Source: Auanema rhodensis
Lineage: Eukaryota; Animalia; Nematoda
Length of the DNA: 64,000 bases
Direction of reading: 5' to 3'
Assembly: GCA_964057225.1 (NCBI GenBank)
Contig: OZ059897.1
Location: 15,314,001 to 15,378,000, forward strand
Made by a program: the position numbers and the translations under genes. Positions 12,754-59,219 of this stretch are shown piece after piece (within the stretch, counting starts at the first letter, position 1; each line of letters opens with the position of its first letter). The notes under the pieces are model-generated. The model was not told the origin of the DNA. It did not search any database and saw only the letters and a program-made list of their open reading frames with translations.

Positions 12754-13018
12754 TTATAATACGTGGACTTTGCCTAATGCTTCCTCTAATGTGGTAATTT
12801 CGCCTATAATGATTACAACTTAAAATGAGTTTTGAAATGTAGAAAAACTCACTCTTGATCTCACGAGCCAGTCTCTGAATCTCAGAAACCTTATCCAACA
12901 CCTCAACACGTTGAGTGTAAGCGTTATAACGAACTTGGAAAGGGCGTGGAATAGTAGAAGCCCAAGCCCTGTGGCTCAAATGGCTCAACTCTTGGCCGAA
13001 AATATTAATAAATATTAT
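12754..13018 (-). pseudogene. pah-1 3' fragment 3
   Basis: As fragment 1, +6368. Confidence 0.9.
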
Positions 13019-13354
13019 TTTTTATTCCTTTTGAATGCCTTTATTTGTATGTATTTTGATAGTATTTTGAAAAAAAAAGATTCTTGAATAAGCTAGAATG
13101 ACCGAGAAATTTCTAGCATCATCTTGTTGTTGTGGCTGAGTCATGTTAGATAAGTGCGAGAGAGTGTGTGCTTATGAGAGAGCGCAGAAGAACTTTCGCG
13201 AAAGAGCGCGATAATTCTCCAATTTTGATATATAAGAACCGTGGTTCAATCATTCAGCACCCCAGAATCTCAGAAAATTATCTGATATCTACATTCTACA
13301 ACTGCTATTCAAAACTATTATCATTTACTCTTTATATTCAATTGATATTCCAAA

Positions 13355-15467: not shown

Positions 15468-15937
15468 GTTTTAATGATTTACCTCGTTAGTCCTGTAAAT
15501 ATTTGCTTTTACCATGACGTTCCATTACTATACGGGTGTTTTAACTTATGTGTTTCCGTTGTATAGTATAGAATAACTTTATTAGTTTGAATTGTTAGTT
15601 TATATATGTATATTACTATGTTGTATATATAGTTGTTTTATAATAAATGTATTTTTATTAAATTTTTAAATATTTAAGAAACACAACCGTTTTCTCCAAA
15701 TAACATTTTCAAAATGAAACTTTTTTCTTTTTTTTCAAAATTTTATGTTAATTTTTCATTTCTTTTTCATTATTTACGTCACTTGTCACGTAAATAACTA
15801 ATTTACAATTCGATTTATCAATAATGAAAATCGATATTCTTTGCTTATTTTGTTTTGTGAACAATTTAAAATAATCTTTATTTTCATGGCCATGATACAA
15901 AATATAGTAAGTTAAGTAAGAATATTGTGAGTCCAAT

Positions 15938-19606: not shown

Positions 19607-20355
19607 GCTTCAAACACTTAACGTTAGGAATGAGAATTTGGAAAGCAAAATGACGGTAATAGATAGGCGGAGCTTATTTAGCAAGTCGTGCTAGAGTCTT
19701 TGATTATCACGTGTCTTAAGAAGAAAAAAAGGAAAAAGAAAAAAAAAGTGAGATGAAGATGATATAGTTGACAATCTGATAGACAAATTAAATTATCAGT
19801 TTATGATTAAACATTATAATTAATGAATTAACAAGTCACATTATAGGAGAAAAGACAAGAGGTGGTGAGAGGGGTGGCGAATGGTGGTAAGGATTCCATT
19901 TAATTTTGATAAACAGGTAAGAAGTTTTGTAATGGGGGCTCATGTCATTAGAACAGAATGAGAGCAATTACAAACGATTGTCAAGCAAATTTAATAGCTG
20001 AAAACTTGAATATAAATGGTCCGTGGTATGCATGTTCAAAGAAGGATTCACAAAAAATTTGACGACACATCAAGTTTGCAATACAAAAAGTTTGTCTTAA
20101 AAACTAACTTGTCACTGGCAGATGGAGATGTTCAAACCACGATAAGGACCTGAACATTAGAAGCTCATAGAGTATGCTCGTAAGAACTTGAATTTTGAAA
20201 AGAAAAAATTATGAAAAAGAGTAATAAAACGGACTGAATGCTTTTACATCATGTTTTTGATGATTTTGATCAAAATTCATTTCATCAAACCGTGTCAAAA
20301 GACGTTAATGAGATGAGGATAAGAACAGTGTAGTATGAAAGAGAATTTAAAGCTT

Positions 20356-20357
<2 letters not shown>

Positions 20358-20450
<93 letters not shown>

Positions 20451-20472
20451 AAGAGAGAGAGAGAAAGAGAGA
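20358..20472. repeat. (GA)n microsatellite, about 115 bp
   Basis: Direct observation. Confidence 0.97.
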
Positions 20473-23400
20473 AGTAGGTACATTGACATTCTATGTTAAC
20501 TATATAACAAATCTAATTTAAAGTAATAAATCATTAGAAGAAAAAGATTTTTTTCAAATTTCTAAGATTTTATTTGAAGAAATACATATTTCATGTTATT
20601 TTTATATAATAAATATATTTATATAAGTTAAATATTTTGTTTTTTTTCATTTAAAAACAAATTTTTTCAACTTTATAAACTACTAAATGAAAAATAGCTT
20701 GTGATTTCGATGATAGAAAATGATTTTCATGACACAAAAAGAAATGAAGAAATAGCTTTGATTATGTTCATATTCTGTCATTCATTACCCCATACCCACT
20801 CCCCCCCCCCCCTCTCTCTTATTCAACCAATATTGGATGAAATATCAGTTAAAAACCGGCCACCAGCAGAAAACTGTTAATTGAGCTCATTAATCATTGT
20901 TGTTGATATACTTTCATATGTGATCAAAAGATTTTTCATAATAATAATTTAATTTTTCACATATAAACTCAAATTCCTCCTAAACTAAAATAATTTTTAT
21001 ATAAAAGATCATTTTAACAAATAAATATAGTAAAATCGTAAAAGAACAATTTTCGTTGAAACATAAGAGATTTTTTGGATCTTTCTTCAAACCAAAAAAG
21101 GGTTAAAAACGAACATTCTGATCGTTTATAATTTTACAACAACATGATGATCCGTTGTCGAACATTCCAGTTACAAAATTTTTGATTAAATCGTTTAAAA
21201 GGAAAATAAAGAAAAAATGACTCGAAAGATCGAGTAAATTAATTTATATTAAATTATTTTTAATTAAAGAATATATTCTTTATATTAAATAAATCAATAA
21301 TTTATTGAAATAAACAGGTTATTATGATAAAGATTATCTTTCTAAAAATATCAATAAAATATATTATAATTTAAATAATTATATAATTTTTAAAAATTAT
21401 TTTAAATAAATAAAAAGATTTAAATAAAAATAAAATAAACAAACCTTAATTTGATGCATATTTTGTATAATATTTAATAAAAATATTAGAAGAAGAGATT
21501 ATTTGGTTATTACTACTATTAACTAACTAATCTGTTAACTATTTATATAGATATCATATAGATTATCTATATTAGATCTTAAATATATGATCTTTTATTG
21601 ATTTATTTTATATATTAACAACAAATAAGGTTATTTATAATATAATAATAATAATATTTTGATTATTTATTATCAAAATTATAATTTTTTTCTTATTTTC
21701 TTTGTAATGTTTCTTTTTTTTTCAAATATTGTTCTCATTTTTATATTATAGTTAGTATAATAATAAATTGATGATTATATATGTAATTTTATTTTTAAAA
21801 AAACATATTAAATTACTCCGATATGTTATTAAATTCATTCAAATCTCATCATTTTTTTCATAAATATTTGAAAAAAATAATATATATCAGGTTTTCATTG
21901 TTCATATTCCCACAACTAATTCTATAATCACTATGATTCTGAAGCAGAATGTTGTCGAGAAAATAGTAGGTTTCGTTTCGAAATTGTTAGCAACTAAGGT
22001 CATATTCAGGTTAACGAGGCTTTGCAATCGAACCACGTCTACGGAATGACCATTAATGGGCAACGTCGTCAGCTATCTGCATCCGAAATCTTAAGATTTT
22101 AAAATTAAACAGCAAAGATAACACATAAATTCAAATAAATGTTTATTTATGTATATTCACATAGTAATATATTGAATAAAATATTAGAAGATATACAATA
22201 TCCATGAAGAAAGAGATGAGCTTAAGGATGTGTGAAAATCCATGGTAACCACCTTTCACTACCTTGCTAAGAAGGATCTATTTCCAATTGTATACATATA
22301 CATGAATGTATAGTTAAGTATATGATATAATTAAATTTCTAATATAGATATATTTATATTTTCGTTTGAATATTGATATGTATGTTGATATGTTAATCCT
22401 TGTTTAACTTTTATTTTAAGTTTTTAAAGATTATTTTCTTTTTTATTATATATATATATATATATATATATATCATATCATATAATAATAATAATAATAA
22501 TATTTGAGGTTGTTATGAAAATAATGAAAGAGATCCTCTCTATAACTGGATCATTGAATACTTAATATGATGTCAAGATTTGCCTCTAAATGAGCGTGAG
22601 ATAATAATATCTAAAGAGAGTTGCTATAAGGAATATAGATGATAGATAGATTATAAAGTAAGAGATATATGGGATAAATGAACTGTTCAAGAGAGCGAGG
22701 GATGGCTAGAGATGATGAGAGTATGAGACTGACGACGTCATCTGAGACTAACCTTGAGTTGAGGAGCCATGGACTAAGTGACGTTCAGGTCCTCACAGTC
22801 ATTGCATACTATACTCTTCTATCTATGTAAAATCAGCTGAATATCTATGAGATAGAGAGAGAGCATTAGAAGATCAGAGAAAAAGCAAAAGAGATTGTAT
22901 GAACGGGTAGGAGAGGTTGAAGTCAGGTCAGATATGTCCTTGACGACAGGCCATTGATACTCTTCTACCATACATACGTATACCGTCCGTCAGTTTGTCA
23001 GAAGGCTCACATACGCACAGAAATGTCTTTGTTTGTCTGTCCTCTCTCTCTATCTCTTTCTCAATTCTATATATCTCTCTTCAAACTACATGTTCATCAT
23101 TCTGTTCTCTCACTTTCTCTCTCATTTTCTTTCTTTGAACTGATGTCGAAGCCGATTTTCTCATAAACACTGGAATCTACCTCTGAGCGACATTGATGAT
23201 GATGATGACGATGTTCAAATTTTTCTTTTCAAACATATTCTTTCCCTTCTTAATCTACTTTTCTCTTCGCCGCCACCCCATCTCCCTCCCATTTAGAGCT
23301 TTTCCTTTGAATCTTAAGCACAAACGTTGTTCAACAGTTCCTGATTATAGCTACTTCACCTCATATTTTTTGAATTATTAAAATCAAAATGATTCGAATA

Positions 23401-31943: not shown

Positions 31944-32879
31944 ATGAAAGGTATCTTTCTCCTCTGCTTTATATCCATTTCAAGCATTTATGCTGCACCT
32001 GCAGCCACAACCACACAGGTTTATTTCAATTTTCATTACCAAATTTACTTCTTAAAATTAAATTTAGAGTTTCAGTAGTTCTTTTGATACAATAGATGAA
32101 AGAAAAGTATATGCAGGGTGTTATCCAAAATTCAAAGGATATGATGCCGTTTTCCTATCAGCTTTTGATTCTTACAAAGAGGTTATGAATCCTTGGTTAA
32201 TAGAAAATATCAATTCTACTAAATTCAATGGATATCGAACTGAATTGTTTATTGAACTTAGTAGTAAATCTAAGAAAACACCATACCAAATTGTCAAAAC
32301 CATTTATGATACTTTGAAATCAAACAAAATTAGTCCAAACTTCATGTGGTTGAAGGTAATCAGTAAATTTAATTTTTTTTTAAATCTCTCAATTTTTTTT
32401 AAAGATTAAAAATCCCAAAAGATGGAGCAACTCTACTCGAGACAATATGGCCTACATCCGAACCTTTAGATCAGAATTATTGGTTAGTTTCTACAATCTT
32501 ATCGGTTTTCTCATAAACTATGTTTCAGAGTAGATCCATTAGAGTAGGATTTTACACAGAAAAGACCAGTTGGGAACAAATCACAGATAATGATACTTAT
32601 TTCTTTTTGGATCCACTTTGGTATCATTTCAAATATTATAAAGAATGATTTCAAAATATTCTTTTAGGTACGGATTTGACAACAAAAATGAAAAAAGTAA
32701 AGATTTCTCTGATTATGAAAAGATTGGAGGATGGGATCAACCAACTGCGAAATCATGGCTCACCGGATCATATTGCAATATTATGAATAAACTGTAAGTT
32801 CATAGATTGTATTTTAATAATTTTCAAATATTTCTTCAGAATGATTTACGTACCAGGATCGTTGAAATCTACAATTTAA
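31944..32879 (+). CDS. Divergent secreted protist-type lysozyme-like protein
   Basis: Signal peptide MKGIFLLCFISISSIYA, then GYDAVFL, RTELFI, FMWLK, RVGFYTEKTSWEQIT, PLWY, DFSDYEKIGGWDQPTAK, ending LKSTI*. Confidence 0.82.
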
Positions 32880-35342
32880 CTGAAATATGTTATGTTATAA
32901 CATGAATTGTAATAAAAATAAATAAATTCTTTTTTATTTCTTTAAAATAATTTATAAATTAATAATAATTTATATGAAAATATACATATAATATGCTCTT
33001 GATCACATGAATACAATGTTCTTTTATCTTTTTCTTTTAAAAAGAATTGATAAAATCGTCCAATCTTTAGACTATAATAACTAAAATATGATAATAATTC
33101 AAGATAATTAGTATTATCACTCAAACATTTGACCCATTATGTACCTTAAAACCAAAAATTGAAACCAAAAGCATGAAAATGTCTACATATATAGATAGAT
33201 ATAGATATCAAGGGTGTGGAAGTTCCGCCACGGTATTAAACCGGAAGCATTTACGCTCAATAGAAGATATGGCTACAACATGTAATTTAGATAAATATTA
33301 ACCAAGTTTTAAACAAACTTGTTACAAACTTAGTCATTACCAAATTTCCTAGAGAACTAGAGAGAGATGATGGAATAAAACTAGAGAGAGATGATGGAAT
33401 ATAGTTTTCATATAATTATAAGGAAAGTCTTCAATCAAAATATTTTTAAATGAAAAAACATAATTTTCATTTCCAATTATACTTATAGATATGTTTCTTT
33501 TTAACCGAATGATTTGGAATGATATGTACTTTATACAAATGAATCACTTAATAGAAAACCTGAGCCTCAAAATGGCAAAATACATGTTGTTCCTTGTATT
33601 AGAGAGCAAAGGCTTTCAAGAATTCGTTATAGTTTCAAACTTAATATTAATTCAATAATGTTTAAATATATATGAATTACCGGAAGTATAACATCATTAA
33701 GTTGTCTTGAAGTATTTTGGTATTTTGTGTAATTTTTGGCTAATTGAAAATCTATATATAAGCTCAAATAGATGCTTTCTGTTTGTCATTGCTACCAAAA
33801 ACCGCAGAAACGCGAAAAGTATTTGTACTGTCTGCTTCGAGCTATTTCCTTGAAAATCCTTGTTTAGGTTCTCTTCGCCTTCTGTAGTGGTTTATCATCA
33901 TTGTTTCCGGCCAGTCTGAGGGAGGATAGTAAACGGAGTACAGCGAGTTGAAGCTGGTGATAATCCATCTCTTGGTCATTGTTGTTCTAATCATCTCTCA
34001 TTCTCGTTAATGCCTTTTTCCCTCACCTCAGCGTATTTCTGTCGCTCTAAGCCCTATCTTTCGCACAATTTGGAAAATTCTTATTTTCTCTGTTTCTCAG
34101 AAGCATCTTCTGTATCTATTCGTCTTCTATTTGCAATTTTCGAGAGATTGCACCAAAGCGAGAACCTATTCCTGTTCACATTCTTCATGCCTATTTCCAT
34201 CTCAGTTATGATCTCATTTTCCAAATGTATGTATTTCAATGATTTTCATCCCTTTTTCTAAAATCACAAATATTGTGTTGAATATATAACAATGACATTC
34301 TTTTCGTGCATAGGTTTATATAACTTTAGGTTCTACATATGTGCTATGCGTTATGTGCTATTGCTTTTAATAGCATTAAGCCTAAAAGACCTAAATAACC
34401 AGATAACTGACTGACCAGAATTTCTCTTTTCAACTCAAATTTTCTATTTTTCATTCCCTTCTATATGATTCTTATAAGATTATTTTTCTCTTTATAGTAT
34501 ATTTCATGAAAGATATTCTTATTACGAAATAATGAAGAAGGTCATCTTCCATTTCATTTGCACATCCTATCATTCGTTTCCGGATCAGAGCTGAAATATT
34601 CTTTGAGTCATGATGATCCAATCTATTAAGACTATGATGATGAATGTCAGCTTCATCATTATCCATCTTTGTAATAGGTCTCAGTAATTAAAGTCATTGA
34701 TTGACAAATGAGAAGCACTATAACCAATGAGATTCTTTGTTGAAAGAGCTAAGCGAATGAGATTGTTTTTCTTTTTTTTTTATTTCTTGTAACATAAAAT
34801 TGTTTTTTCTTCAGGTCATTAATCCCTTTCATAAAAGCTCTTTTAGTACGTTTTTGTTAGAAAGAAATGAATTTTAACTTTCAAAATATATTCAATCGTA
34901 TCGTTATAAATCATATAAGTTAATATAAAATTATTTATATTTTATTTTCTTTATAATTTCTAAAAAATAAAAACTTTTTTCTTTTTTTTCAAATATTTTG
35001 TTCAAAAAATCAATTGATTTTCTTTAATTTCCTATAATTAATTATTTCTTTTGACAAAAGTTAAAGCATTTTTTAAAACTTTAACACCTGCTAGAGATAA
35101 TATTTTGAGTTTAATTTCTTTTCTTTTTCATTGAATTTCTTTTTATTTTAATTAAAGAATATTTTAATTCTAATAAGTCACAGATTTAGAAATATATTTT
35201 ATAATTAACTAGATCAAGCTGGAAGATTTCAAATGGTTTTGCCAAAGAAAGACATAATGCTGCTATTCAATGTCCTTTGAGATCCTAAATTGAACCTAAA
35301 TATTATGCCGTTCTTCATGCTTCTGTCCCTTTTCAACACTTT

Positions 35343-35374
<32 letters not shown>

Positions 35375-38300
35375 ACTGTTACTCTTTTTCCTAATTTGCC
35401 TCTTTAGCATTTTCTCTATTCTTTCTACCCGTTTCTTCCCTTATTTCTCTATGTTTCTCTTTCCATCTTGTTCACTCTCGTGCATGTTCTCTTCATGACC
35501 CAGCTACAGATCTTCCTTCGAGCCTCCTTTTGCAGGCCACCCTGTCTCTCTGACCACTTCACGTTCGTTGATCAATATTCTCCTCTGGTCAATGGGCTGA
35601 ACCTTCTGGCATCGGAGAAGAGCAATTGCACACAGGCATATACCAGAAACGGAATATAAGGCCGGAAGAAGCATGGCTTTCCGAACATGCGCATGGTTTC
35701 CTGGAGTTAAGTCGTTGCTAGTCAGGGCTAATTTTTTCTTTTCAACCACACTCTTGGACATTTGACCTCTATGTACATTTTGAACAGAAAACTTGTCTAA
35801 TCACTATTTCTCTTTATTTTTCAAGATTTCTAGCATATTGCTACACATCTATTCTCCCTCGTCTTTCAAATTTATTGGCAACTCTTTTTTTTCCTTCCAT
35901 TATGCCTTCCTGACCACTAACAGCCGCTTCTCAAGTGAAACTTGTCGGATTTGATTCTATGATGTCGGTGATGATCCCCGCATTTTTGAGAAAACTGAAA
36001 CAAGAGGCAAATATCAGACTTCACTATTACTGACAGTCAAGTTGAACAACTAGCTAATATGCTTATAAGGCATATGACAATGTATTTCTCACTTGCACAT
36101 CTTCTCACTCTCTCTCTCTCCCTCTCTCTTTCTCTCTCTCTTTCTCTCTCTTTTCATCTTTGTTTTTGCTTGTCTGCTTCTTATTTCACTTTCACTCTTA
36201 ATAGTAAGATCTCGACAAGATTCATGCTTCCATCAAACGAACTTTTCTTTGACTCCTGAGAGAATTGAGCTCTTAGTCGTTGTCGTTTCCATCTTCTCTC
36301 TTTCGTCCATTCATAAAACATAGCCACCAAACTAAGTCCATCGTTGCAGATGAGGTCTGTCAGTCCAAAGCCAATATTGTTGTCTTTTGAGAAATACGAT
36401 GACTGGCTGAAACATGCATGTCAGCATAAGCTGTATTTCCTTTTCACATAATTCTTTCTAATATTTTTTTTTATAAAAGTTATGATATGTATATATGTGT
36501 ATGGCATAAATTAACTGACAGAATTCATATGTTTTTTTTTTATTAAAAATGCTTTAGAAAGCTATTAGTATGTGGATAGATGATGTAGTATTCATTTCAT
36601 CTATCTCATTTTGGTTTACAAATGTTTTACGAGAGTTTTAAAGCTATGAAAGCTATTAGTACACATATGCTACTTAGATGAAGCAATATTTCATGCTATT
36701 TAGTCTTTTAAAACAATAAAATCATTGAAAGCCACCAAAAGGAACCAAAAATCTTCTTTTTTTTACAAAAAATAAACAAATATTAACAAATAATGTTGTT
36801 TTTGTGTTATATACTATAATTGAATAGTCATCTAATAAGATTTTATTATGCTTTCATCTAATGTTTTGACCCATATATGGCCTTAACTAGCCAACCGTCT
36901 GTTCATTTATCTATCTATCTATGTACATGTATGTATGTTCACAACATTAGTTATTTCTTCTTTTAGGTTCTAATCATTCTAATGAAACTTTATTATTCAA
37001 TGTATACTATGTATACAGTATACATTGAATAATAAAGTTTCATTAGAATGATTAGAACCTAAAAGAAGAAATAACTAATGTTGTGAACATACATACATGT
37101 ACATAGATAGATAGATAAATGAACAGACGGTTGGCTAGTTAAGGCCATATATGGGTCAAAACATTAGATGAAAGCATAATAAAATCTTATTAGATGACTA
37201 TTCAATTATAGTATATAACACAAAAACAACATTATTTGTTAATATTTGTTTATTTTTTGTAAAAAAAAGAAGATTTTTGGTTCCTTTTGGTGGCTTTCAA
37301 TGATTTTATTGTTTTAAAAGACTAAATAGCATGAAATATTGCTTCATCTAAGTAGCATATGTGTACTAATAGCTTTCATAGCTTTAAAACTCTCGTAAAA
37401 CATTTGTAAACCAAAATGAGATAGATGAAATGAATACTACATCATCTATCCACATACTAATAGCTTTCTAAAGCATTTTTAATAAAAAAAAAACATATGA
37501 ATTCTGTCAGTTAATTTATGCCATACACATATATACATATCATAACTTTTATAAAAAAAAATATTAGAAAGAATTATGTGAAAAGGAAATACAGCTTATG
37601 CTGACATGCATGTTTCAGCCAGTCATCGTATTTCTCAAAAGACAACAATATTGGCTTTGGACTGACAGACCTCATCTGCAACGATGGACTTAGTTTGGTG
37701 GCTATGTTTTATGAATGGACGAAAGAGAGAAGATGGAAACGACAACGACTAAGAGCTCAATTCTCTCAGGAGTCAAAGAAAAGTTCGTTTGATGGAAGCA
37801 TGAATCTTGTCGAGATCTTACTATTAAGAGTGAAAGTGAAATAAGAAGCAGACAAGCAAAAACAAAGATGAAAAGAGAGAGAAAGAGAGAGAGAAAGAGA
37901 GAGGGAGAGAGAGAGAGTGAGAAGATGTGCAAGTGAGAAATACATTGTCATATGCCTTATAAGCATATTAGCTAGTTGTTCAACTTGACTGTCAGTAATA
38001 GTGAAGTCTGATATTTGCCTCTTGTTTCAGTTTTCTCAAAAATGCGGGGATCATCACCGACATCATAGAATCAAATCCGACAAGTTTCACTTGAGAAGCG
38101 GCTGTTAGTGGTCAGGAAGGCATAATGGAAGGAAAAAAAAGAGTTGCCAATAAATTTGAAAGACGAGGGAGAATAGATGTGTAGCAATATGCTAGAAATC
38201 TTGAAAAATAAAGAGAAATAGTGATTAGACAAGTTTTCTGTTCAAAATGTACATAGAGGTCAAATGTCCAAGAGTGTGGTTGAAAAGAAAAAATTAGCCC

Positions 38301-38650
38301 TGACTAGCAACGACTTAACTCCAGGAAACCATGCGCATGTTCGGAAAGCCATGCTTCTTCCGGCCTTATATTCCGTTTCTGGTATATGCCTGTGTGCAAT
38401 TGCTCTTCTCCGATGCCAGAAGGTTCAGCCCATTGACCAGAGGAGAATATTGATCAACGAACGTGAAGTGGTCAGAGAGACAGGGTGGCCTGCAAAAGGA
38501 GGCTCGAAGGAAGATCTGTAGCTGGGTCATGAAGAGAACATGCACGAGAGTGAACAAGATGGAAAGAGAAACATAGAGAAATAAGGGAAGAAACGGGTAG
38601 AAAGAATAGAGAAAATGCTAAAGAGGCAAATTAGGAAAAAGAGTAACAGT

Positions 38651-38682
<32 letters not shown>

Positions 38683-41090
38683 AAAGTGTTGAAAAGGGAC
38701 AGAAGCATGAAGAACGGCATAATATTTAGGTTCAATTTAGGATCTCAAAGGACATTGAATAGCAGCATTATGTCTTTCTTTGGCAAAACCATTTGAAATC
38801 TTCCAGCTTGATCTAGTTAATTATAAAATATATTTCTAAATCTGTGACTTATTAGAATTAAAATATTCTTTAATTAAAATAAAAAGAAATTCAATGAAAA
38901 AGAAAAGAAATTAAACTCAAAATATTATCTCTAGCAGGTGTTAAAGTTTTAAAAAATGCTTTAACTTTTGTCAAAAGAAATAATTAATTATAGGAAATTA
39001 AAGAAAATCAATTGATTTTTTGAACAAAATATTTGAAAAAAAAGAAAAAAGTTTTTATTTTTTAGAAATTATAAAGAAAATAAAATATAAATAATTTTAT
39101 ATTAACTTATATGATTTATAACGATACGATTGAATATATTTTGAAAGTTAAAATTCATTTCTTTCTAACAAAAACGTACTAAAAGAGCTTTTATGAAAGG
39201 GATTAATGACCTGAAGAAAAAACAATTTTATGTTACAAGAAATAAAAAAAAAAGAAAAACAATCTCATTCGCTTAGCTCTTTCAACAAAGAATCTCATTG
39301 GTTATAGTGCTTCTCATTTGTCAATCAATGACTTTAATTACTGAGACCTATTACAAAGATGGATAATGATGAAGCTGACATTCATCATCATAGTCTTAAT
39401 AGATTGGATCATCATGACAAAATAATCTTATAAGAATCATATAGAAGGGAATGAAAAATAGAAAATTTGAGTTGAAAAGAGAAATTCTGGTCAGTCAGTT
39501 ATCTGGTTATTTAGGTCTTTTAGGCTTAATGCTATTAAAAGCAATAGCACATAACGCATAGCACATATGTAGAACCTAAAGTTATATAAACCTATGCACG
39601 AAAAGAATGTCATTGTTATATATTCAACACAATATTTGTGATTTTAGAAAAAGGGATGAAAATCATTGAAATACATACATTTGGAAAATGAGATCATAAC
39701 TGAGATGGAAATAGGCATGAAGAATGTGAACAGGAATAGGTTCTCGCTTTGGTGCAATCTCTCGAAAATTGCAAATAGAAGACGAATAGATACAGAAGAT
39801 GCTTCTGAGAAACAGAGAAAATAAGAATTTTCCAAATTGTGCGAAAGATAGGGCTTAGAGCGACAGAAATACGCTGAGGTGAGGGAAAAAGGCATTAACG
39901 AGAATGAGAGATGATTAGAACAACAATGACCAAGAGATGGATTATCACCAGCTTCAACTCGCTGTACTCCGTTTACTATCCTCCCTCAGACTGGCCGGAA
40001 ACAATGATGATAAACCACTACAGAAGGCGAAGAGAACCTAAACAAGGATTTTCAAGGAAATAGCTCGAAGCAGACAGTACAAATACTTTTCGCGTTTCTG
40101 CGGTTTTTGGTAGCAATGACAAACAGAAAGCATCTATTTGAGCTTATATATAGATTTTCAATTAGCCAAAAATTACACAAAATACCAAAATACTTCAAGA
40201 CAACTTAATGATGTTATACTTCCGGTAATTCATATATATTTAAACATTATTGAATTAATATTAAGTTTGAAACTATAACGAATTCTTGAAAGCCTTTGCT
40301 CTCTAATACAAGGAACAACATGTATTTTGCCATTTTGAGGCTCAGGTTTTCTATTAAGTGATTCATTTGTATAAAGTACATATCATTCCAAATCATTCGG
40401 TTAAAAAGAAACATATCTATAAGTATAATTGGAAATGAAAATTATGTTTTTTCATTTAAAAATATTTTGATTGAAGACTTTCCTTATAATTATATGAAAA
40501 CTATATTCCATCATCTCTCTCTAGTTTTATTCCATCATCTCTCTCTAGTTCTCTAGGAAATTTGGTAATGACTAAGTTTGTAACAAGTTTGTTTAAAACT
40601 TGGTTAATATTTATCTAAATTACATGTTGTAGCCATATCTTCTATTGAGCGTAAATGCTTCCGGTTTAATACCGTGGCGGAACTTCCACACCCTTGATAT
40701 CTATATCTATCTATATATGTAGACATTTTCATGCTTTTGGTTTCAATTTTTGGTTTTAAGGTACATAATGGGTCAAATGTTTGAGTGATAATACTAATTA
40801 TCTTGAATTATTATCATATTTTAGTTATTATAGTCTAAAGATTGGACGATTTTATCAATTCTTTTTAAAAGAAAAAGATAAAAGAACATTGTATTCATGT
40901 GATCAAGAGCATATTATATGTATATTTTCATATAAATTATTATTAATTTATAAATTATTTTAAAGAAATAAAAAAGAATTTATTTATTTTTATTACAATT
41001 CATGTTATAACATAACATATTTCAGTTAAATTGTAGATTTCAACGATCCTGGTACGTAAATCATTCTGAAGAAATATTTGAAAATTATTA
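32815..41090. repeat. Giant palindrome 1: arms 32815-37008 and 37017-41090, 8-nt spacer; right arm lacks 120 bp
   Basis: Mirror ORFs sum to 74025 (inner) and 73905 (outer). Boundaries and apex checked base by base. Confidence 0.95.
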
Positions 41091-42559
41091 GATGATGCAT
41101 GAAATGCCTCCTTGTCCAGAAAAATATTTTTCAAAATTGACAATTTTTACTTAAAAATCTGTGAATGAGAAAAAATGAAAAGATTAGAATGAAAGTTGTC
41201 AAATACATAGATATTTGGAAATAAATGAGAACAACGTCTTCCACTACTATTGATTTGGATGAGATGGATGCCAATAATGGAAGCGACATCATCTAAATAA
41301 TGAAATGGAATAAAAGTAGTTACAAAGAAAATGTTTTTTTTCTTTTAAAATATAAAATATAATAAAAAAAAAGAATATATATATATATATATATAAACGT
41401 ATATACAAATATTAAGGAAAATCATTAATCAATGATGAACTGATTGAATGATTGGGTAAAATTCCAGCCAATTAAATGAAGAAATCAAGTCTATTTCGTT
41501 AATCTATAGTATATGTTGTAAAGAAACAAAAAATGAATGAAAAAATTGAAAAGTTTGATTGTAAATGTTAAAGATATCTATCTATATGTATTTACTAGAT
41601 TATAGAATATAAAATATTTAAATGTATATATATGTATATGTAAATATTTTGTTTTTTTCTTATTTAAGCTTAAATATAATAAAAAAATAAAATAAAATCT
41701 AAGGAAGGATCAAAGATTATAAAATATTTTTCTTTGTGTCCATTTTCATTCACTTTTAGACTATACATATATAGTTAAATATGATTATAGTATTACTGTT
41801 TCAATAACATTTGAAATAAGTTTTGAGGAGAAAAAAAAGAAAAATAAGTTATAGGAAAAGATAATATTAGTCATCATTATAACAAGTAATTGATATATAC
41901 TATTTGAGAGATATTATAAACCTTTTGTTAAATAAAAAATGTTTCAAAACAATCAATGTAAAAGAAGAAAAATCTATATATATTTGGTCATAATATTTAC
42001 AAGATCAGTATGATTTTATCATCTTTTTCTTTCTTTTTTATTTTGATATAAAAACACTTCAATAAAACAAAATCTTTAATAGTATAGAAATATATATGTA
42101 TATATAGTAAAGTAAAATATACATATATAGAGTAAAGAAAAAGGTAAAAAAACCAAAAAAGTGATAAAGAGGTATCTTGTTTAAACAGACGATTGAGTTC
42201 TAAACTATGGGAGACGAGAGTTAAAGAGATGAGAGTTGAAGTTAAAAGAAAAAAATATTTGACAGCTGAGGGGGTGAAAGGTGATAGGGAGATTGTTCAG
42301 ATGATAATCCTCAAATAAATTTCCTATGCTACATCTTTTTGAGGAGAAAAAGGTGTCGTAGATAAGATGATTGGGTTCCGGAACATCTCACGTAAAGCGA
42401 AAGGACAAATATGAACAAACTAAGTATATGACACATTTCTCTTCATGATTTGTATAAAGCAGAATGTGATAAGAACAAAACTGAAAAAGGAGTTAAAAGG
42501 ATAAAAGGAAAAGATTTATCTATAGTTTATAAGAAGAAAGATGTATAAAGAAGGCCAAT

Positions 42560-42597
<38 letters not shown>

Positions 42598-44151
42598 AAG
42601 TAAATGACAGAGAAAGATGAAGCAATGGGAAAAAGGAAGAGAATGACGGTATTATGGAGAAGAAAAACCAGAACCAATCAGAAAAACTTTGAGAGGCTAG
42701 GTGGATAAGGATTCAGGAATTGTTCATCAACGTGAGGAAATTGTCTTGTATAGCAGAAAAAATGAATTGTGGGTAGATAAAACCTTGACAAAGGCAGTGA
42801 ATAGAAAACAAATCGAATCAAATAGCAAATGATAGTGAATGTTGAGGTGTTTTAACAATCTCTTTCTTCTTACTTTCGTCATTTCCTTTCTATGGTAACT
42901 AAAAGGAAAATAAAGGTTACCAAGGAGTTTAAGTACAATAAATAAAAAAAAAAGAAAATGAGGAAAGTATAAGTAATAGAAAAAGCTTTGGAAAATGAAG
43001 AATTACTTTTGAAAATTCAATGCAAGCTTAATGATCATCAAGTACTGAATATTGAACATTGTCGTTCAGACTAAGGATTAAGAGAAGCGAAAATTAAATT
43101 ATATACTATATAGAATAGTTAGATATACTATGTATGTATATGAATATAAAATGAGAAAAGAATAGTATAAAATCATTAAATATTTAAATATTTTCATATA
43201 GAAAATGAAAATAAATAATCAGTTTTTATAAAAAAGAAATATAAAAAGAAATATTATAGTTTGAAACAAATTTTTATGACAAATCTCATGTTCAAATATA
43301 TTCCGATAAAGTATGATGAGATTGTAAAGGGTGTGGTAGGGCTATAAAGAGTATTTTTGAAGTGAAAAACCTGTTAGATTGATATGTTGTATCTCTTGGG
43401 GTTATCCACCAAAAAATATATATATATTTCTCATTAATTCTTATTATTCTATTGATAGATATTAAACTTTATTTGGATAAAATAAATAAACAAAAATAAT
43501 AAAAATATTGAAGTAAATAGAAATATTATATTCTTCATCTTATTTATAATTTAAATATTAAAATAAATATATGATTTATATAAAAATAAAGATTAAATAT
43601 AATATTATAAAGATAGAGAGAGAGAGAGAGGAGAAAGAGAGAGAGATGAGATGGAATTGAGGAAAAAAAAGAATAAAAGAAGAACAGTAAGAGCCATATA
43701 CAAGACTAGATTCAAACAAACACTGTAGGTGGTTATACTTTTTTGTACAAAAAAAACTTTGAGGGAAAAAATGAGGAAACAGATTAAGAGGATTGAAGCT
43801 TACTCATAAATGCTGTAATGGAATAGAACATAATAAAAAAGATTTTGAATGAATAAAAGTTGGTGAGGATTGCGTTAGAGAATTGAAGCGCTATGAGAGT
43901 ATATAGGATGATGTAGAGTGGATGATGTCTTCTAGACAGTGATGCGCGATTATAAGAAACAACTAGTATTGTAATAAAGAGAAGAGGTAATATTGAGATA
44001 TATGTCAATAACAAATAAGTGTCAGTTGCCTTTTAACATATTTAATCGAAAGAAAGAAAGAAAGAAAGATATAGTATTAAAGAGAATAAGCTGTGAAATA
44101 CAGAAGATATATAACTATATGATGTGATTGAAAGAGAGAGAGAGAGAAAGC

Positions 44152-44183
<32 letters not shown>

Positions 44184-44773
44184 ATAGATTTGAGGTTAAA
44201 AGAAGGAAAAAAGATGAGAAACTATAGAATGATTAAACGATGAAGACTACAGAGAATCAACTTTCACTCAATTCATTTATATAAATTACTCATATTACAA
44301 AAGATAAAATAAGAAATAATACAGTAAAATATTATTTGAAATCCAACATATATGGTTTAGAAGATTCTATTAAATCTTAAAAATAAATAAATATAAAAGA
44401 TTAAAAAGTTCTTTAAGAATCTAAGTAATAATCTATAAAATTTTAATCAAACAAAAATAAAAAAATTAATAGTTAGTTAACTAACTATTAATTTTTTTAT
44501 TTTTGTTTGATTAAAATTTTATAGATTATTACTTAGATTCTTAAAGAACTTTTTAATCTTTTATATTTATTTATTTTTAAGATTTAATAGAATCTTCTAA
44601 ACCATATATGTTGGATTTCAAATAATATTTTACTGTATTATTTCTTATTTTATCTTTTGTAATATGAGTAATTTATATAAATGAATTGAGTGAAAGTTGA
44701 TTCTCTGTAGTCTTCATCGTTTAATCATTCTATAGTTTCTCATCTTTTTTCCTTCTTTTAACCTCAAATCTAT

Positions 44774-44805
<32 letters not shown>

Positions 44806-46359
44806 GCTTTCTCTCTCTCTCTCTTTCAATCACATCATATAGTTATATATCTTCTGTATTTCACAGCTTATTCTCTTTAATACTATATCTTTCTTTCTTT
44901 CTTTCTTTCGATTAAATATGTTAAAAGGCAACTGACACTTATTTGTTATTGACATATATCTCAATATTACCTCTTCTCTTTATTACAATACTAGTTGTTT
45001 CTTATAATCGCGCATCACTGTCTAGAAGACATCATCCACTCTACATCATCCTATATACTCTCATAGCGCTTCAATTCTCTAACGCAATCCTCACCAACTT
45101 TTATTCATTCAAAATCTTTTTTATTATGTTCTATTCCATTACAGCATTTATGAGTAAGCTTCAATCCTCTTAATCTGTTTCCTCATTTTTTCCCTCAAAG
45201 TTTTTTTTGTACAAAAAAGTATAACCACCTACAGTGTTTGTTTGAATCTAGTCTTGTATATGGCTCTTACTGTTCTTCTTTTATTCTTTTTTTTCCTCAA
45301 TTCCATCTCATCTCTCTCTCTTTCTCCTCTCTCTCTCTCTCTATCTTTATAATATTATATTTAATCTTTATTTTTATATAAATCATATATTTATTTTAAT
45401 ATTTAAATTATAAATAAGATGAAGAATATAATATTTCTATTTACTTCAATATTTTTATTATTTTTGTTTATTTATTTTATCCAAATAAAGTTTAATATCT
45501 ATCAATAGAATAATAAGAATTAATGAGAAATATATATATATTTTTTGGTGGATAACCCCAAGAGATACAACATATCAATCTAACAGGTTTTTCACTTCAA
45601 AAATACTCTTTATAGCCCTACCACACCCTTTACAATCTCATCATACTTTATCGGAATATATTTGAACATGAGATTTGTCATAAAAATTTGTTTCAAACTA
45701 TAATATTTCTTTTTATATTTCTTTTTTATAAAAACTGATTATTTATTTTCATTTTCTATATGAAAATATTTAAATATTTAATGATTTTATACTATTCTTT
45801 TCTCATTTTATATTCATATACATACATAGTATATCTAACTATTCTATATAGTATATAATTTAATTTTCGCTTCTCTTAATCCTTAGTCTGAACGACAATG
45901 TTCAATATTCAGTACTTGATGATCATTAAGCTTGCATTGAATTTTCAAAAGTAATTCTTCATTTTCCAAAGCTTTTTCTATTACTTATACTTTCCTCATT
46001 TTCTTTTTTTTTTATTTATTGTACTTAAACTCCTTGGTAACCTTTATTTTCCTTTTAGTTACCATAGAAAGGAAATGACGAAAGTAAGAAGAAAGAGATT
46101 GTTAAAACACCTCAACATTCACTATCATTTGCTATTTGATTCGATTTGTTTTCTATTCACTGCCTTTGTCAAGGTTTTATCTACCCACAATTCATTTTTT
46201 CTGCTATACAAGACAATTTCCTCACGTTGATGAACAATTCCTGAATCCTTATCCACCTAGCCTCTCAAAGTTTTTCTGATTGGTTCTGGTTTTTCTTCTC
46301 CATAATACCGTCATTCTCTTCCTTTTTCCCATTGCTTCATCTTTCTCTGTCATTTACTT

Positions 46360-46397
<38 letters not shown>

Positions 46398-47866
46398 ATT
46401 GGCCTTCTTTATACATCTTTCTTCTTATAAACTATAGATAAATCTTTTCCTTTTATCCTTTTAACTCCTTTTTCAGTTTTGTTCTTATCACATTCTGCTT
46501 TATACAAATCATGAAGAGAAATGTGTCATATACTTAGTTTGTTCATATTTGTCCTTTCGCTTTACGTGAGATGTTCCGGAACCCAATCATCTTATCTACG
46601 ACACCTTTTTCTCCTCAAAAAGATGTAGCATAGGAAATTTATTTGAGGATTATCATCTGAACAATCTCCCTATCACCTTTCACCCCCTCAGCTGTCAAAT
46701 ATTTTTTTCTTTTAACTTCAACTCTCATCTCTTTAACTCTCGTCTCCCATAGTTTAGAACTCAATCGTCTGTTTAAACAAGATACCTCTTTATCACTTTT
46801 TTGGTTTTTTTACCTTTTTCTTTACTCTATATATGTATATTTTACTTTACTATATATACATATATATTTCTATACTATTAAAGATTTTGTTTTATTGAAG
46901 TGTTTTTATATCAAAATAAAAAAGAAAGAAAAAGATGATAAAATCATACTGATCTTGTAAATATTATGACCAAATATATATAGATTTTTCTTCTTTTACA
47001 TTGATTGTTTTGAAACATTTTTTATTTAACAAAAGGTTTATAATATCTCTCAAATAGTATATATCAATTACTTGTTATAATGATGACTAATATTATCTTT
47101 TCCTATAACTTATTTTTCTTTTTTTTCTCCTCAAAACTTATTTCAAATGTTATTGAAACAGTAATACTATAATCATATTTAACTATATATGTATAGTCTA
47201 AAAGTGAATGAAAATGGACACAAAGAAAAATATTTTATAATCTTTGATCCTTCCTTAGATTTTATTTTATTTTTTTATTATATTTAAGCTTAAATAAGAA
47301 AAAAACAAAATATTTACATATACATATATATACATTTAAATATTTTATATTCTATAATCTAGTAAATACATATAGATAGATATCTTTAACATTTACAATC
47401 AAACTTTTCAATTTTTTCATTCATTTTTTGTTTCTTTACAACATATACTATAGATTAACGAAATAGACTTGATTTCTTCATTTAATTGGCTGGAATTTTA
47501 CCCAATCATTCAATCAGTTCATCATTGATTAATGATTTTCCTTAATATTTGTATATACGTTTATATATATATATATATATATTCTTTTTTTTTATTATAT
47601 TTTATATTTTAAAAGAAAAAAAACATTTTCTTTGTAACTACTTTTATTCCATTTCATTATTTAGATGATGTCGCTTCCATTATTGGCATCCATCTCATCC
47701 AAATCAATAGTAGTGGAAGACGTTGTTCTCATTTATTTCCAAATATCTATGTATTTGACAACTTTCATTCTAATCTTTTCATTTTTTCTCATTCACAGAT
47801 TTTTAAGTAAAAATTGTCAATTTTGAAAAATATTTTTCTGGACAAGGAGGCATTTCATGCATCATC
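41091..47866. repeat. Giant palindrome 2: 3388-bp arms, no spacer (apex 44478/44479, ...tagttagtt|aactaacta...)
   Basis: Mirror ORFs 43784..44014 and 44943..45173 sum to 88957. Symmetry ends exactly at 41091/47866. Confidence 0.95.
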
Positions 47867-55600: not shown

Positions 55601-58600
55601 GGAATTAAAGTTTATTCAATGCAGAACCAACTTTCTTCTTAAAAATTCTTTTTTTTTATTGAAATTACATGCACTTTATACTATTACTTGTTATTTTATA
55701 TTTATATACATATATATATATTATTTTTTTATTAAATATTTTGAAAATTTCAAAGACATTCTAAGTTATTCATATATTTCTTTTTTCAGACGAAGTTTTT
55801 GATGATCAACGCTCTTCTATGTACAAAGAAATTGAGGAACAATTAAATAAAACTTTTCCAAGTACAATGACAAATGGTTTGTTTTAGAAGTTTGTCTTAT
55901 ACATATTATAATAAATTCTTTTTAGAATCTGTATATGCTACAGCAGATTTGATAACCAGACCAGATGAATTGGAAATTAGTAAAATCACATTGGAAGATC
56001 ATGTTGATAATCTAGTAAGATTAATTCTTTTGATTTAAGTTATTGTCTTATCTTCTAGGATGATTCATCACCTGAATACAGCTATAGTCAGCAATATACA
56101 AGTCGTTTACCTATAGAACCACCTCTATATCAATTGTATATGTTGGAAGAACAAGAAAAATTAGTTGATGATACATTACTTACGGAACCATCCGTCATCG
56201 TGGATACGGTTACTGTTGAAGAAGCTGAAGCTCCAATTAAGGTTCGTTCATCTCTATCTTTCCACCTTATCCTTGTTATATTCTTCACATTACAATTTTC
56301 ATTCTTTGTAGAGCCGTCGTGAGTCTTCAGTATCATCAGATAGTGGACGAGGTGCTGATTGCAGTACCTCGGCTTCAGCTCTGACTTCAAACACATCTAT
56401 GAGACGTGAACGTCTAGTTGCTGGAAGCCATTTCGGTAGTCAACGCAGTCTTTGGTGTGAATTGGCTGAAGTGAAGTCTGCTGGCCTCTTGGAAACATTG
56501 GATGAGGAAACAAAGCTTTTGCAAGAAGCATACTTTGAGGTTATAACAAGTGAAGCAAGCTACTTGAGATCACTCAACATTCTTATAACTCACTTTATGG
56601 CTAGCCAAGAAATGCTAGGTAACTATAAGATTTTTCTCAATTCAACTGAATATTTGTTTTTCCAGGATCCAAAAGCCCATCATCAGTTATATCAAATGCA
56701 GATCGTAAACAGCTTTTCAGTAATATCTTTGCTGTTCGTGATTGTAGTGAAAAGTATTTTATTTTTCATTAAGAAATATAAACTAATTCTTCAGGTTACT
56801 ATGTGATTTGGAAACTAGATTGGAGGAGAATTTAGTTTTAGACGATATCTGTGATATTCTTGTTGAACATTTTGAAAAACATTTTGATGTTTATATCAAA
56901 TATTGTTCTAATCAAGTCTATCAAGATAGAACATTAAGACGTTTAAAAACTGAAAATCATGGCTTTCTTACTTCTGTTTCTCGATTGGAAGCTGATCGTC
57001 AATGCCAAGGATTAGATATGAGATCTTTCCTAATGTTGCCCATGCAACGCATTACAAGGTCCTTATATCATATAATTTATAATTATAAAATATATTTATA
57101 GATATCCTTTATTACTATATGCCATCATTGATCGTGTTAATTCTGAAACTGAACGTTATAAAACTGTTTCAAAAGCATTAACATTAGCTAATAAGGTTGT
57201 TCGTGAATGTAATGAAGGTGCTCGTCGAATGGAAAGAACTGAACAACTTCTTGAAGTTGATAAACGTCTTGTTTACAAGGATCCCGATCTCAAGTAATAT
57301 ATCTAATAATTATATTTATTTATAATTTATATTTTATAGAAGAATTCCATTAGTATCAAATAGTCGCCACTTAGTAAAGCGTGGTACGCTGACTCAGTTG
57401 GTTGAACGACGAACGAAAGGTCTCCTTCAAGGAAGACAAAAAGCTCGAAGCATACACGTCTTTCTTTTCTCAGATATTATTATGATTACAAAAAAGAAAA
57501 TGTTGTTTATATATTAATTTTATAATTATTTTATATATTTCTTATAGTAATGGAACATATGTTTGTAAAGATTATGCTAGTCGACCCTATGTAGATATTG
57601 AACCTATTGAACCTGATAATCCAAGAGTAAGTTCAAACTTTTATTTTTCTCATCTTTTAATTTTAAATTTCAAAACTTTATTCTTGTATTCAGATTCCAC
57701 CTGGAGTTATCTCATCATTAGCTACACGACCACATCTTTTCCTCTGTGTTCTAATGAGAAATGCTCGTGGAAAACAGACAGAACTTCTTCTGAATGCAGA
57801 ATCTGAAACTGATAGAGAACGATGGTTATCAGCCATTCGTCCACCTACAGTATGTTTATATTTAAATTTTCCTTTATGTATTCACCAAATAATAATATTT
57901 CAAATTATCTAATCTTTGAAATTCAGTTGATTTTCTGTTTTGAATTGAAATAATATTGGATTGAAAGAAAGAATAAGAAAAAGACGTTTATTTGAAAACA
58001 ATTATTTGTTTTTTCAAAATTATTTAAAACAAATTTTATAAAAACAATCCAAATAAAACCAATTCACTTATGTATATTAACTCACACTTCTTACAAATAA
58101 TATAACTGAAGAAGAAGAAGTAGAAGAAATCAAATATTTATTTCTTTTTCTTTATAATACACAACCAACAATGTTTTTCCCCATAATTCATTAACATCTA
58201 ACACATTCTTTCCCTTTTTCAGTCAACGAATCCTGAAGAGAAAGTTTATGCTGAATGGGATTGTCCTCAATGTATTGTTGTTCATCCTTATACTAAAACA
58301 CAAGATGATGAAATGAATCTACAAGTTGGAGATATGATCAATATTCTTCGAAAAATGCCTGACGGTAATACCAGTGATGATGATGGTGTTGATGCTGATC
58401 CGTATGATGATGAGGATGTTGATGTTGATGAAAATGACGATGACGTATTTGATGATGATATGCATGATCTCATGAATAATGCTCGTCCTTCATCACTATC
58501 GTCTGCTTATCATTCTGAAACTTCTGCATGCACGTGAATATGTTGATGCCTATGTTTCTCTTCTGTTTTTGCCACTTTCATTCCTTTGAAAAAGCGGCTT

Positions 58601-59219
58601 TTAAAGTTTTAGCTGACGTCTGTTAAGCTTGCACGCATTCTTGTGCATTTGCGTCAACCAAATCAAATACCTAATTCTACATTCTACATTCGTGTCAACG
58701 AATTACCTTTACTGTTCACAAACTTATATTCTGTTGCTTCTACGTTCTTCTCGCATGTGAAAACTACAACCTTGTGCTGTCGTGGTCTCTGAAATCCTGC
58801 TTGTATCTGCACGTACACGTCACATCACACTATATCTGAATGTACAGTATACCTTTCTCCTTCCAGCTTCTATAGTTTTGCATATGATCACATATAATCA
58901 CATTAACTTTTTCTAATTTATCAATTATTTCAGGATGGTACTACGGTGAAAGATGTCGAGACAATGTGGGAGGATGGTTCCCATCATCATATATTCAACA
59001 AGTACTCAATGACCATGTACGGGCAAACAACTATCGACACCGACTCAGACTTATACAGGTAATATCCTTCAGCTTTTGCTCGTCCTTACCATCAGCTCTA
59101 AACAGGCAGCGTCTGGCTTTACGAGGAGCAATGTGGGGAGGGGAACGTCTCCGTTCATGGATCGATTAAGACGAATGAGTAATCCACGACAACTGTTCCA
59201 ATCAGGCATAGGATTGTAA
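49638..59219 (+). CDS. ephx-1: Ephexin-family RhoGEF (Pro/Ser-rich N-terminus, DH, PH, SH3), many exons
   Basis: EPPLYQLY, LWCELAEVK, LQEAYFEVITSEASYLRSLNIL, YIKYCSNQVYQDRTL, CQGLDMRSFLMLPMQRITRYPLL, MERTEQL, PLVSNSRHLVKRG, FLFSD, WDCPQC...QDDEMNLQVGD, GWYYGER...GWFPSSY. The N-terminal exon structure is less certain. Confidence 0.9.

What the first reader, a model, noticed from the sequence alone, without database searches (positions are those of the whole stretch)
32815..47866. Two back-to-back giant palindromes (A-A'-B'-B): geometry of one DNA break healed by fold-back at both ends
Seen: palindrome 1 ends at 41090 and palindrome 2 starts at 41091 with no intervening base. A continues the upstream lysozyme gene and B continues into the ephexin upstream region. 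A and B carry CT tracts on the plus strand like the downstream flank, while A' and B' carry GA tracts, so A'B' (37017-44478) is the derived part. Inference: an ancestral X-A-B-Y broke at A|B, each end was hairpinned or folded back and copied for about 4.2 and 3.4 kb, and the new ends were joined. This resembles kilobase-scale P-nucleotides, by analogy with hairpin-forming hAT/RAG excision. An equivalent route is an ABAB duplication followed by inversion of the inner BA. It differs from inverted triplication and from a single fold-back. No transposase or terminal inverted repeat explains it.
Basis: partly seen in the sequence, partly recalled or inferred. Interest (0 to 1): 0.85.

Follow-up and report, generated by a model that had tools for sequence, protein, structure and literature searches.

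The report
Two abutting perfect kilobase DNA palindromes
A 15-kb stretch between two genes of a rhabditid nematode reads A-A'-B'-B, two perfect palindromes set back to back; this looks like the scar of one chromosome break whose two ends were each fused to a mirror copy of themselves, and public reads confirm the joint between the palindromes but not the two fold-back centres.

Summary
A (32815-37008) is the exact reverse complement of A' (37017-41090), 4074 nt, apart from an 8-nt spacer and a 120-nt piece (34487-34606) found only in A. B' (41091-44478) is the exact reverse complement of B (44479-47866), 3388 nt, with no spacer. The palindromes abut at 41090|41091 (J2), a blunt joint with no microhomology.

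Twenty-seven of the 30 31-mers in a 60-nt stretch over J2 are unique to the joint. Both sampled words are held by 9 DNA runs from 3 studies and by 4 RNA runs. J2 is therefore real DNA, not a single chimeric read, and it is probably transcribed.

Canonical k-mers cannot tell A-A'-B'-B from a plain tandem duplication A-B-A-B, so the inverted orientation rests on the assembly alone.

The organism is probably Auanema rhodense. The N-free contig with resolved perfect repeats implies long accurate reads, probably native-DNA HiFi.

My reading: a real germline rearrangement from one break at A|B (0.6), replicative template switching (0.2), or an assembly error at the apexes (0.2). I found no support for a transposase footprint, cruciform resolution or a programmed-elimination site.

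The parts
32068..32796 (+). Last exons of a lys-like gene (32068-32406, 32529-32624, 32690-32796). The stop codon lies 19 nt upstream of the left edge of A.
Evidence: tblastn against a paralogous exon at 59891-60160(-) and translation. No Pfam family.
32815..37008 (+). Arm A, contiguous with the upstream flank X and pyrimidine-rich on the plus strand.
34487..34606 (.). 120-nt segment present in A and missing from A' (deletion joint at 39418|39419). Blunt edges, no microhomology, not repeated elsewhere in the window.
37009..37016 (.). Apex 1: the 8-nt spacer ATGTATAC between the arms. It is flanked by GTATACT / AGTATAC, which could be read as a 7-bp natural inverted repeat with an 8-nt loop.
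   Evidence: Local hairpin energy is ordinary (z = -1.06).
37017..41090 (-). Arm A', the exact reverse complement of A minus the 120 nt.
41061..41120 (.). J2, the joint A'|B' at 41090|41091 (equivalent to B-end>A-start on the minus strand). Blunt, 0-nt microhomology, no inserted bases. Present in independent DNA and RNA runs.
41091..44478 (-). Arm B', the exact reverse complement of B, purine-rich (0.624).
44478..44479 (.). Apex 2: a spacer-less centre, ...TAGTT|AACTA...
44479..47866 (+). Arm B, contiguous with the downstream flank Y and sharing its pyrimidine-rich plus strand.
56312..59166 (+). Downstream ephexin-type gene: RhoGEF (DH), PH and SH3 exons. It lies more than 8 kb beyond B.
   Evidence: Pfam.

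Best explanation
This is a real germline rearrangement of an ancestral X-A-B-Y intergenic region, lying between a lys-like gene and an ephexin-type RhoGEF gene. One double-strand break at the A|B point left two ends. Each end became joined head-to-head to an inverted copy of its own flank, either by fusion with the equally broken sister chromatid or by fold-back/hairpin capping followed by replication. That step produced apex 1 (8-nt asymmetry) and apex 2 (no loss). The inverted copies were then cut 4.2 kb and 3.4 kb from the apexes, and the two new ends were joined bluntly at J2. One more blunt 120-nt loss occurred in A'. In a holocentric chromosome, sisters fused at one point would be pulled apart along their whole length, so the bridge would break close to the apex; this may explain the short arms. 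Shown: the geometry, the exact identity of the arms, the blunt joints, and the presence of J2 in independent DNA and RNA. Inferred: that the apexes exist in native DNA, that A and B were once adjacent, and every step of the route.
For: Both arm pairs are exact. The outer edges of original and copy coincide to the base, as expected if one extra copy of the segment A+B was used. J2-specific 31-mers (27 of 30 unique) are held at share 1.00 by 9 DNA runs of 3 studies and by 4 RNA runs. All scorable joints are blunt: J2 has 0 microhomology, the 120-nt deletion has 0 microhomology, and apex 2 has 0 spacer. That pattern fits end joining better than microhomology-primed copying. The 120-nt difference shows that A and A' are physically distinct copies and not one molecule read twice. 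B keeps the strand composition of the downstream flank. The window is N-free and resolves 12.6 kb of 100%-identical tandem repeats, so it comes from long accurate reads. The likely source assembly used native-DNA PacBio HiFi with hifiasm, and fold-back read artefacts are virtually absent from HiFi (PMC12870357). Fold-back and hairpin-capped ends that replicate into inverted duplications are established in yeast (PMC10622511; PMC7467729).
Against: Canonical k-mers at J2 fit a plain tandem duplication equally well. Spacer-less kilobase palindromes are normally unstable, so a stably inherited one is unexpected. The arms show zero substitutions, which a very recent event, gene conversion or an assembly effect would each explain. 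The ancestral A|B adjacency is untested. The identity of the organism and of the assembly is inferred, not given.
Confidence: 0.6

Rival explanations
1. Real structure, made replicatively. A fork collapsed or a strand ended at the A|B point. The nascent strand folded back and copied A' for 4.2 kb, switched to the far edge of B and copied B' back to the break, then turned once more into B (a FoSTeS/MMBIR-type chain).
For: Kilobase-scale switches and inverted copies are typical of this class. Apex 1 can be read as priming at a 7-bp inverted repeat with an 8-nt loop, within the range seen for fold-back priming in yeast (5-11 bp repeats, 6-35 bp spacers; PMC10622511). Error-prone copying could have skipped the 120 nt. 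From my own knowledge: C. elegans end-to-end fusions are sealed by interrupted, template-switched duplications (Lowden et al. 2011).
Against: J2 and the 120-nt deletion have no microhomology at all, whereas template switches normally show 2 nt or more. A spacer-less apex 2 cannot arise from intrastrand priming without a loop, unless a natural palindrome sat there.
Confidence: 0.2
2. The apexes are assembly errors. The genome carries a plain tandem duplication X-A-B-A-B-Y (or a 7.5-kb circle with the same joint), and the inner B-A piece was placed in the wrong orientation, or fold-back chimeric reads were assembled at a site that is hard to sequence.
For: J2 words are orientation-blind, so fits ABAB equally well. 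Perfect spacer-less palindromes in assemblies are often artefacts, and fold-back reads make up about 0.6% of ONT genomic reads (PMC12870357). The arms are 100% identical. The region is rich in GA/CT tracts, which from my own knowledge can cause HiFi coverage dropouts.
Against: It needs two orientation breaks at exactly homologous bases in both copies with no N gap. The same contig resolves a 12.6-kb perfect tandem array. HiFi shows virtually no fold-back reads. Fifteen-kb reads would span each palindrome. Chimeric reads are outvoted at normal depth. The 120-nt difference shows the two A copies were resolved separately.
Confidence: 0.2

Closest known systems
Fold-back inversions / inverted duplications from DSBs (hairpin-capped chromosome ends, sister-chromatid fusion, breakage-fusion-bridge), as in yeast sae2/mre11 mutants and human inv-dup-del
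   Same: Head-to-head duplication of the sequence next to a break. The centre has a short spacer that can be read as a small natural inverted repeat (apex 1). The arms are identical.
   Different: Known cases are one-sided: the distal fragment is lost and the product is stabilised by telomere capture or loss of a centromere (PMC10622511). Here both sides of the same break carry a fold-back, the arms are only 3-4 kb long, and the two inverted copies are rejoined, so nothing is lost. Apex 2 has no spacer.
Duplications that seal end-to-end chromosome fusions in C. elegans telomerase mutants (Lowden et al. 2011, from my own knowledge; see also PMC8034613)
   Same: A nematode with holocentric chromosomes, in which inverted or interrupted duplications sit at a healed chromosome discontinuity.
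   Different: Those events occur at telomere-deficient ends of two chromosomes and show template-switch microhomology. This one is interstitial and has blunt joints.
DUP-TRP/INV-DUP and dupINVdup complex rearrangements (FoSTeS/MMBIR)
   Same: A compound duplication with an inverted middle and two or three novel joints within a few kb.
   Different: Those give A-B-(B'A' or an inverted triplicated piece)-..., without palindromic adjacency. Here the middle is A'B', not B'A'; every segment has exactly two copies and each lies next to its own mirror image.
Fold-back / missed-adapter / MDA chimeras in long-read data
   Same: Perfect palindromes with a spacer of 0 to a few nt and 100% arm identity.
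   Different: J2 is present in independent Illumina DNA and RNA runs. The arms differ by a 120-nt indel. The structure is internal to a contig that is otherwise well resolved.
Palindrome formation at programmed breaks (Tetrahymena rDNA, from my own knowledge) and nematode programmed DNA elimination sites (SFE)
   Same: A developmental DSB next to a short inverted repeat can give a giant palindrome, and the likely host species performs massive programmed elimination.
   Different: There is no SFE core (GGC-N3-GCC) at or near either apex, no telomere repeats, and the region is gene-bearing.

Membership tests
Fold-back inverted duplication after a DSB | Two identical arms in inverted orientation meeting at a centre with no or a short spacer | tested here: met
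   an 8-nt spacer and a 0-nt spacer, with arms 100% identical.
Fold-back inverted duplication after a DSB | A short natural inverted repeat at the centre that could prime the fold-back | tested here: inconclusive
   Apex 1 is compatible with a 7-bp repeat and an 8-nt loop, but the palindrome itself hides the ancestral sequence. Apex 2 has no loop. The local fold is no better than shuffled sequence.
Fold-back inverted duplication after a DSB | The junctions exist in native DNA, with arm depth twice that of the flanks | not testable with these tools
Only J2 could be tested, by word sharing.
Fold-back inverted duplication after a DSB | An ancestral single-copy state with A next to B | not testable with these tools
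   No eukaryotic outgroup genome can be reached. The metagenome scan for the end of A found nothing.
Long-read or MDA chimera artefact | Novel joints absent from independent short-read data | tested here: not met
   J2-specific words are held by 9 DNA and 4 RNA runs. The apexes were not tested.
Long-read or MDA chimera artefact | The two arms derive from one molecule and are therefore identical throughout | tested here: not met
   A 120-nt indel separates A from A'.
DUP-TRP/INV-DUP (FoSTeS/MMBIR) | An inverted middle segment present three times, with microhomology at the joints | tested here: not met
   Every segment occurs exactly twice in the window. J2 has 0-nt microhomology.
hAT/RAG-type hairpin excision footprint | An 8-bp target-site duplication on the two flanks, a transposase or TIR nearby, and P-nucleotides of a few nt | tested here: not met
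   The last 8 nt of A (ATGTATAC or TGTATACT) differ from the first 8 nt of B (AACTAACT). No ORF in A or B exceeds 113 aa, and none matched a Pfam family at significance.
Cruciform resolution of one pre-existing inverted repeat into two hairpin-capped ends | Both new palindrome centres carry the same inverted repeat | tested here: not met
   The two centres are unrelated sequences, and no similarity between A and B was reported.
Nematode programmed-DNA-elimination break site (SFE) | A degenerate 29-bp palindrome with a conserved GGC-N3-GCC core at the break (PMC13060919) | tested here: not met
   The only GGCNNNGCC in the window is at 53622, at chance level.
Plain tandem duplication A-B-A-B | A B-end>A-start joint with both copies in direct orientation | tested here: inconclusive
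   The joint exists. The orientation in the contig is inverted, but reads could not confirm it.

The most novel reading that the evidence does not exclude
A naturally fixed, heritable scar of a two-sided sister-fusion (breakage-fusion-bridge type) event in a holocentric nematode. Both ends of one germline break became palindromes and were rejoined without any loss. This left a spacer-less 6.8-kb perfect palindrome that is stably inherited and transcribed, and so could be a source of long hairpin RNA. It would be a natural example showing that holocentric chromosomes resolve fused sisters by breaking within a few kb of the fusion point.
Probability: 0.4. Interest if true: 0.65.

Novelty: new variant of a known kind. 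Interest (0 to 1): 0.5.

Why it matters
If the apexes are real, this is a rare natural record of how a metazoan germline healed one double-strand break. Both ends were capped by mirror copies and then rejoined, and all joints are blunt. Fold-back inversions are known mainly from yeast mutants, from cancers and from one-sided human inv-dup-del cases. A balanced, two-sided, kilobase-scale version in a wild-type holocentric animal would bear on two questions: how bridges break in holocentric chromosomes, and how a spacer-less kilobase palindrome can persist. It also gives a concrete locus for testing palindrome stability and hairpin-RNA production in a species that already remodels its genome by programmed elimination. 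If the apexes are not real, the locus is an ordinary 7.5-kb tandem duplication and a useful example of an assembly orientation error.

Tried and rejected
I worked beside them.

2. The look-up of encoding contigs with four ORFs from A and B found nothing. The organism's proteins are evidently not in that collection, since the HSP70 search returned no hit near 100%.

3. A metagenome scan for the 34-nt end of A gave 0 hits.

5. PDE break site: no SFE core near the apexes. Rejected.

6. hAT/RAG excision: no TSD, transposase or TIR. Rejected.

7. Cruciform resolution of one inverted repeat: the two apex centres are unrelated. Rejected.

8. A 6-nt microhomology at J2, suggested by the repeat finder starting B' at 41085, proved to be an extension through mismatches. 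The joint is blunt.

9. Simple fold-back priming from the terminal GTATAC onto the upstream GTATAC predicts a different centre from the one observed. The model fits only if the ancestral sequence already had a third GTATAC, which cannot be checked.

10. Pfam gave no family for the ORFs tried in A/A' and B'. Rfam and tRNA scans of the window were empty. Tandem-repeat and hairpin analyses at apex 1 showed nothing special.

11. A protein-atlas search of the lys-like exon gave only weak bacterial look-alikes.
Full report
**Observation**

The repeat finder on 30-50 kb and on the whole window reports three perfect inverted pairs that make up two palindromes. An exact string comparison gives the following.
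- A (32815-34486 plus 34607-37008) equals the reverse complement of A' (37017-41090): 4074 nt, no mismatch.
- B (44479-47866) equals the reverse complement of B' (41091-44478): 3388 nt, no mismatch.
- Apex 1 has an 8-nt spacer, ATGTATAC, at 37009-37016.
- Apex 2 has no spacer...TAGTT|AACTA....
- A carries a 120-nt segment (34487-34606) that A' lacks. Its edges are blunt, with no microhomology, and it is not repeated elsewhere in the window.
- The window has no N.

The 41085 start given by the repeat finder comes from extension through mismatches. Chance is not an issue for perfect inverted matches of 3-4 kb.

**Joints**

Read on the minus strand, J2 is B-end followed directly by A-start...GCATCATC|TAATAATTTTC... 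The base after the end of B in the B-Y context (A) differs from the first base of A (T). The base before A in the X-A context (T) differs from the last base of B (C). The joint is therefore blunt, with no microhomology and no filler.

The outer edges of original and copy coincide to the base on both sides. This is what one expects if a single extra copy of the segment A+B was used and its two outer ends were joined. J2 is the same joint a tandem duplication would have, seen here in reverse complement.

**Read evidence**

My one read-laying run, on 39300-45200, was chosen to cover the 120-nt deletion joint, J2 and apex 2.

I used the last sequencing-run run on the 60 nt 41058-41117. Of its 30 31-mers, 27 occur once in the window and are J2-specific; only three lie wholly inside A'. 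Two words were sampled. Both are held, at share 1.00, by 9 DNA runs from three studies (2019, 2023, 2024; three organism labels) and by 4 RNA runs. The chance that both sampled words were non-specific is about 0.7%.

J2 is therefore real in DNA from several independent preparations, and it lies in a transcribed stretch. RNA runs hold only 0.10-0.25 of the words of 39000-43000, so this is not uniform DNA contamination.

The limit of this evidence is that k-mers are strand-blind. J2 fits A-B-A-B as well as A-A'-B'-B. The apexes remain untested by reads.

**Organism and assembly (inferred)**

- A 430-aa HSP70 ORF in the window has its best matches in Auanema sp. JU1783 (86-88% identity) and then in Caenorhabditis (about 81%). 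The HSP70 gene has short GTAAGT...TTTAG introns.
- The run pattern fits the Auanema rhodensis project (PMC6469403): three equal DNA runs in a 2019 study and RNA runs of 18-21 million. That paper describes three independent paired-end libraries, about 19.7 million read pairs per RNA replicate, and a genome GC of 32.2%.
- That 2019 assembly was built from short reads only. It could not have resolved 4-kb perfect inverted repeats or the 12.6-kb perfect tandem array seen here without gaps. The window must come from long accurate reads.
- The long-read assembly described for this species used native DNA, PacBio HiFi and hifiasm, with no amplification (bioRxiv 10.64898/2026.08.27.747507).
- A survey of fold-back read artefacts found about 0.6% in ONT genomic reads and virtually none in HiFi (PMC12870357).

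Together with the 120-nt difference between the arms, which shows two physically distinct copies, this makes an artefact less likely. It does not exclude one.

**Context**

- A starts 19 nt after the stop codon of a lys-like gene (exons 32068-32406, 32529-32624, 32690-32796, plus strand). The gene has paralogous exons at 59891-60160(-) and 2689-2970(+). Pfam does not assign any of them to a family.
- B ends more than 8 kb upstream of the exons of an ephexin-type gene with RhoGEF DH, PH and SH3 domains (56.3-59.2 kb, plus strand).
- A and B hold no ORF over 113 aa, and the ORFs tried there (three in A, one of them also in A', and one in B') gave no Pfam family. The window has no Rfam or tRNA hit. 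I found no transposase or TIR.
- B and the next 4 kb downstream share a strongly pyrimidine-rich plus strand (purine fractions 0.376 and 0.407). A is milder (0.434). A' and B' are the mirror image. The upstream flank is neutral.

**Mechanism**

Several specific models can be set aside.
- *Cruciform resolution of one inverted repeat.* This would put the same repeat at both new centres. The two centres are unrelated.
- *hAT/RAG-type excision.* This predicts an 8-bp target-site duplication on the two flanks. The last 8 nt of A differ from the first 8 nt of B.
- *A programmed-elimination break.* This would need the GGC-N3-GCC core of the SFE (PMC13060919). None lies near the apexes.
- *DUP-TRP/INV-DUP and dupINVdup.* These give other orders and copy numbers.

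What remains is a break at A|B whose two ends were each joined head-to-head to a second copy of themselves. The four scorable joints are blunt or nearly so:
- apex 1: 8-nt asymmetry
- apex 2: no loss
- J2: blunt
- the 120-nt deletion: blunt

That pattern favours end joining between pieces of a sister copy over microhomology-primed copying. It fits sister-chromatid or hairpin fusion on both sides, followed by breakage 4.2 and 3.4 kb from the apexes and rejoining. Holocentric chromosomes might concentrate bridge tension next to the fusion point, which would account for the short arms; this is inference.

Apex 1 can also be read as fold-back priming at a 7-bp inverted repeat with an 8-nt loop. 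This is within the range documented in yeast (PMC10622511), so a replicative route stays open.

My estimates are:
- break plus sister or hairpin fusion plus end joining: 0.6
- replicative template switching: 0.2
- apexes not real, with the true structure a tandem duplication or another misassembly: 0.2

**Comparison and novelty**

The structure works like a fold-back inverted duplication, but it is two-sided, balanced, kilobase-scale and rejoined. I did not find this configuration described in the papers searched. I rate it a new variant of a known kind, conditional on the apexes.

Interest is moderate (0.5). J2 is validated and the geometry is striking. Against that, it is a single locus, the decisive read test could not be run, and the mechanism is inferred.

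Noticed in passing
window 3538-16156, and 1-1614: An HSP70 gene array of 3.96 tandem copies of a 3184-bp unit at 100% identity, plus an exact inverted partial copy at 1-1614 that runs off the window, separated by a 1.9-kb spacer. Each gene has short GTAAGT...TTTAG introns and ends in EEVD. Such perfect copies suggest very recent amplification or strong concerted evolution.
   Followed up: partly
window 34487-34606 versus 39418|39419: The only difference between the arms of palindrome 1 is a blunt 120-nt (40-codon) indel. On the minus strand the segment contains a possible small exon flanked by ...TTTCAG and GTAAT.
   Followed up: partly
window 2689-2970(+), 32068-32796(+), 59891-60542(-): Three paralogous lys-like gene copies lie in one 64-kb window. 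They were recognised by mutual tblastn/BLASTP similarity only, and no Pfam family was assigned.
   Followed up: partly
window 41058-41117: J2-specific words occur in four RNA runs, so a transcript crosses the joint between the two palindromes. Transcription through an apex would give long hairpin RNA.
   Followed up: no
window 16527-16877(-) and 62509-62643(-): Exons of a biopterin-dependent aromatic amino acid hydroxylase (Pfam E 2e-20 and 3e-27) and of a cytochrome P450 (E 2e-13) flank the region.
   Followed up: no
window 20345-20480: A long (GA)n tract lies on the plus strand upstream, opposite in polarity to the CT tracts of A, B and the downstream flank.
   Followed up: no
They lie 72 nt from apex 2, inside B', and their mirror is 44550-44588 in B.
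   Followed up: no
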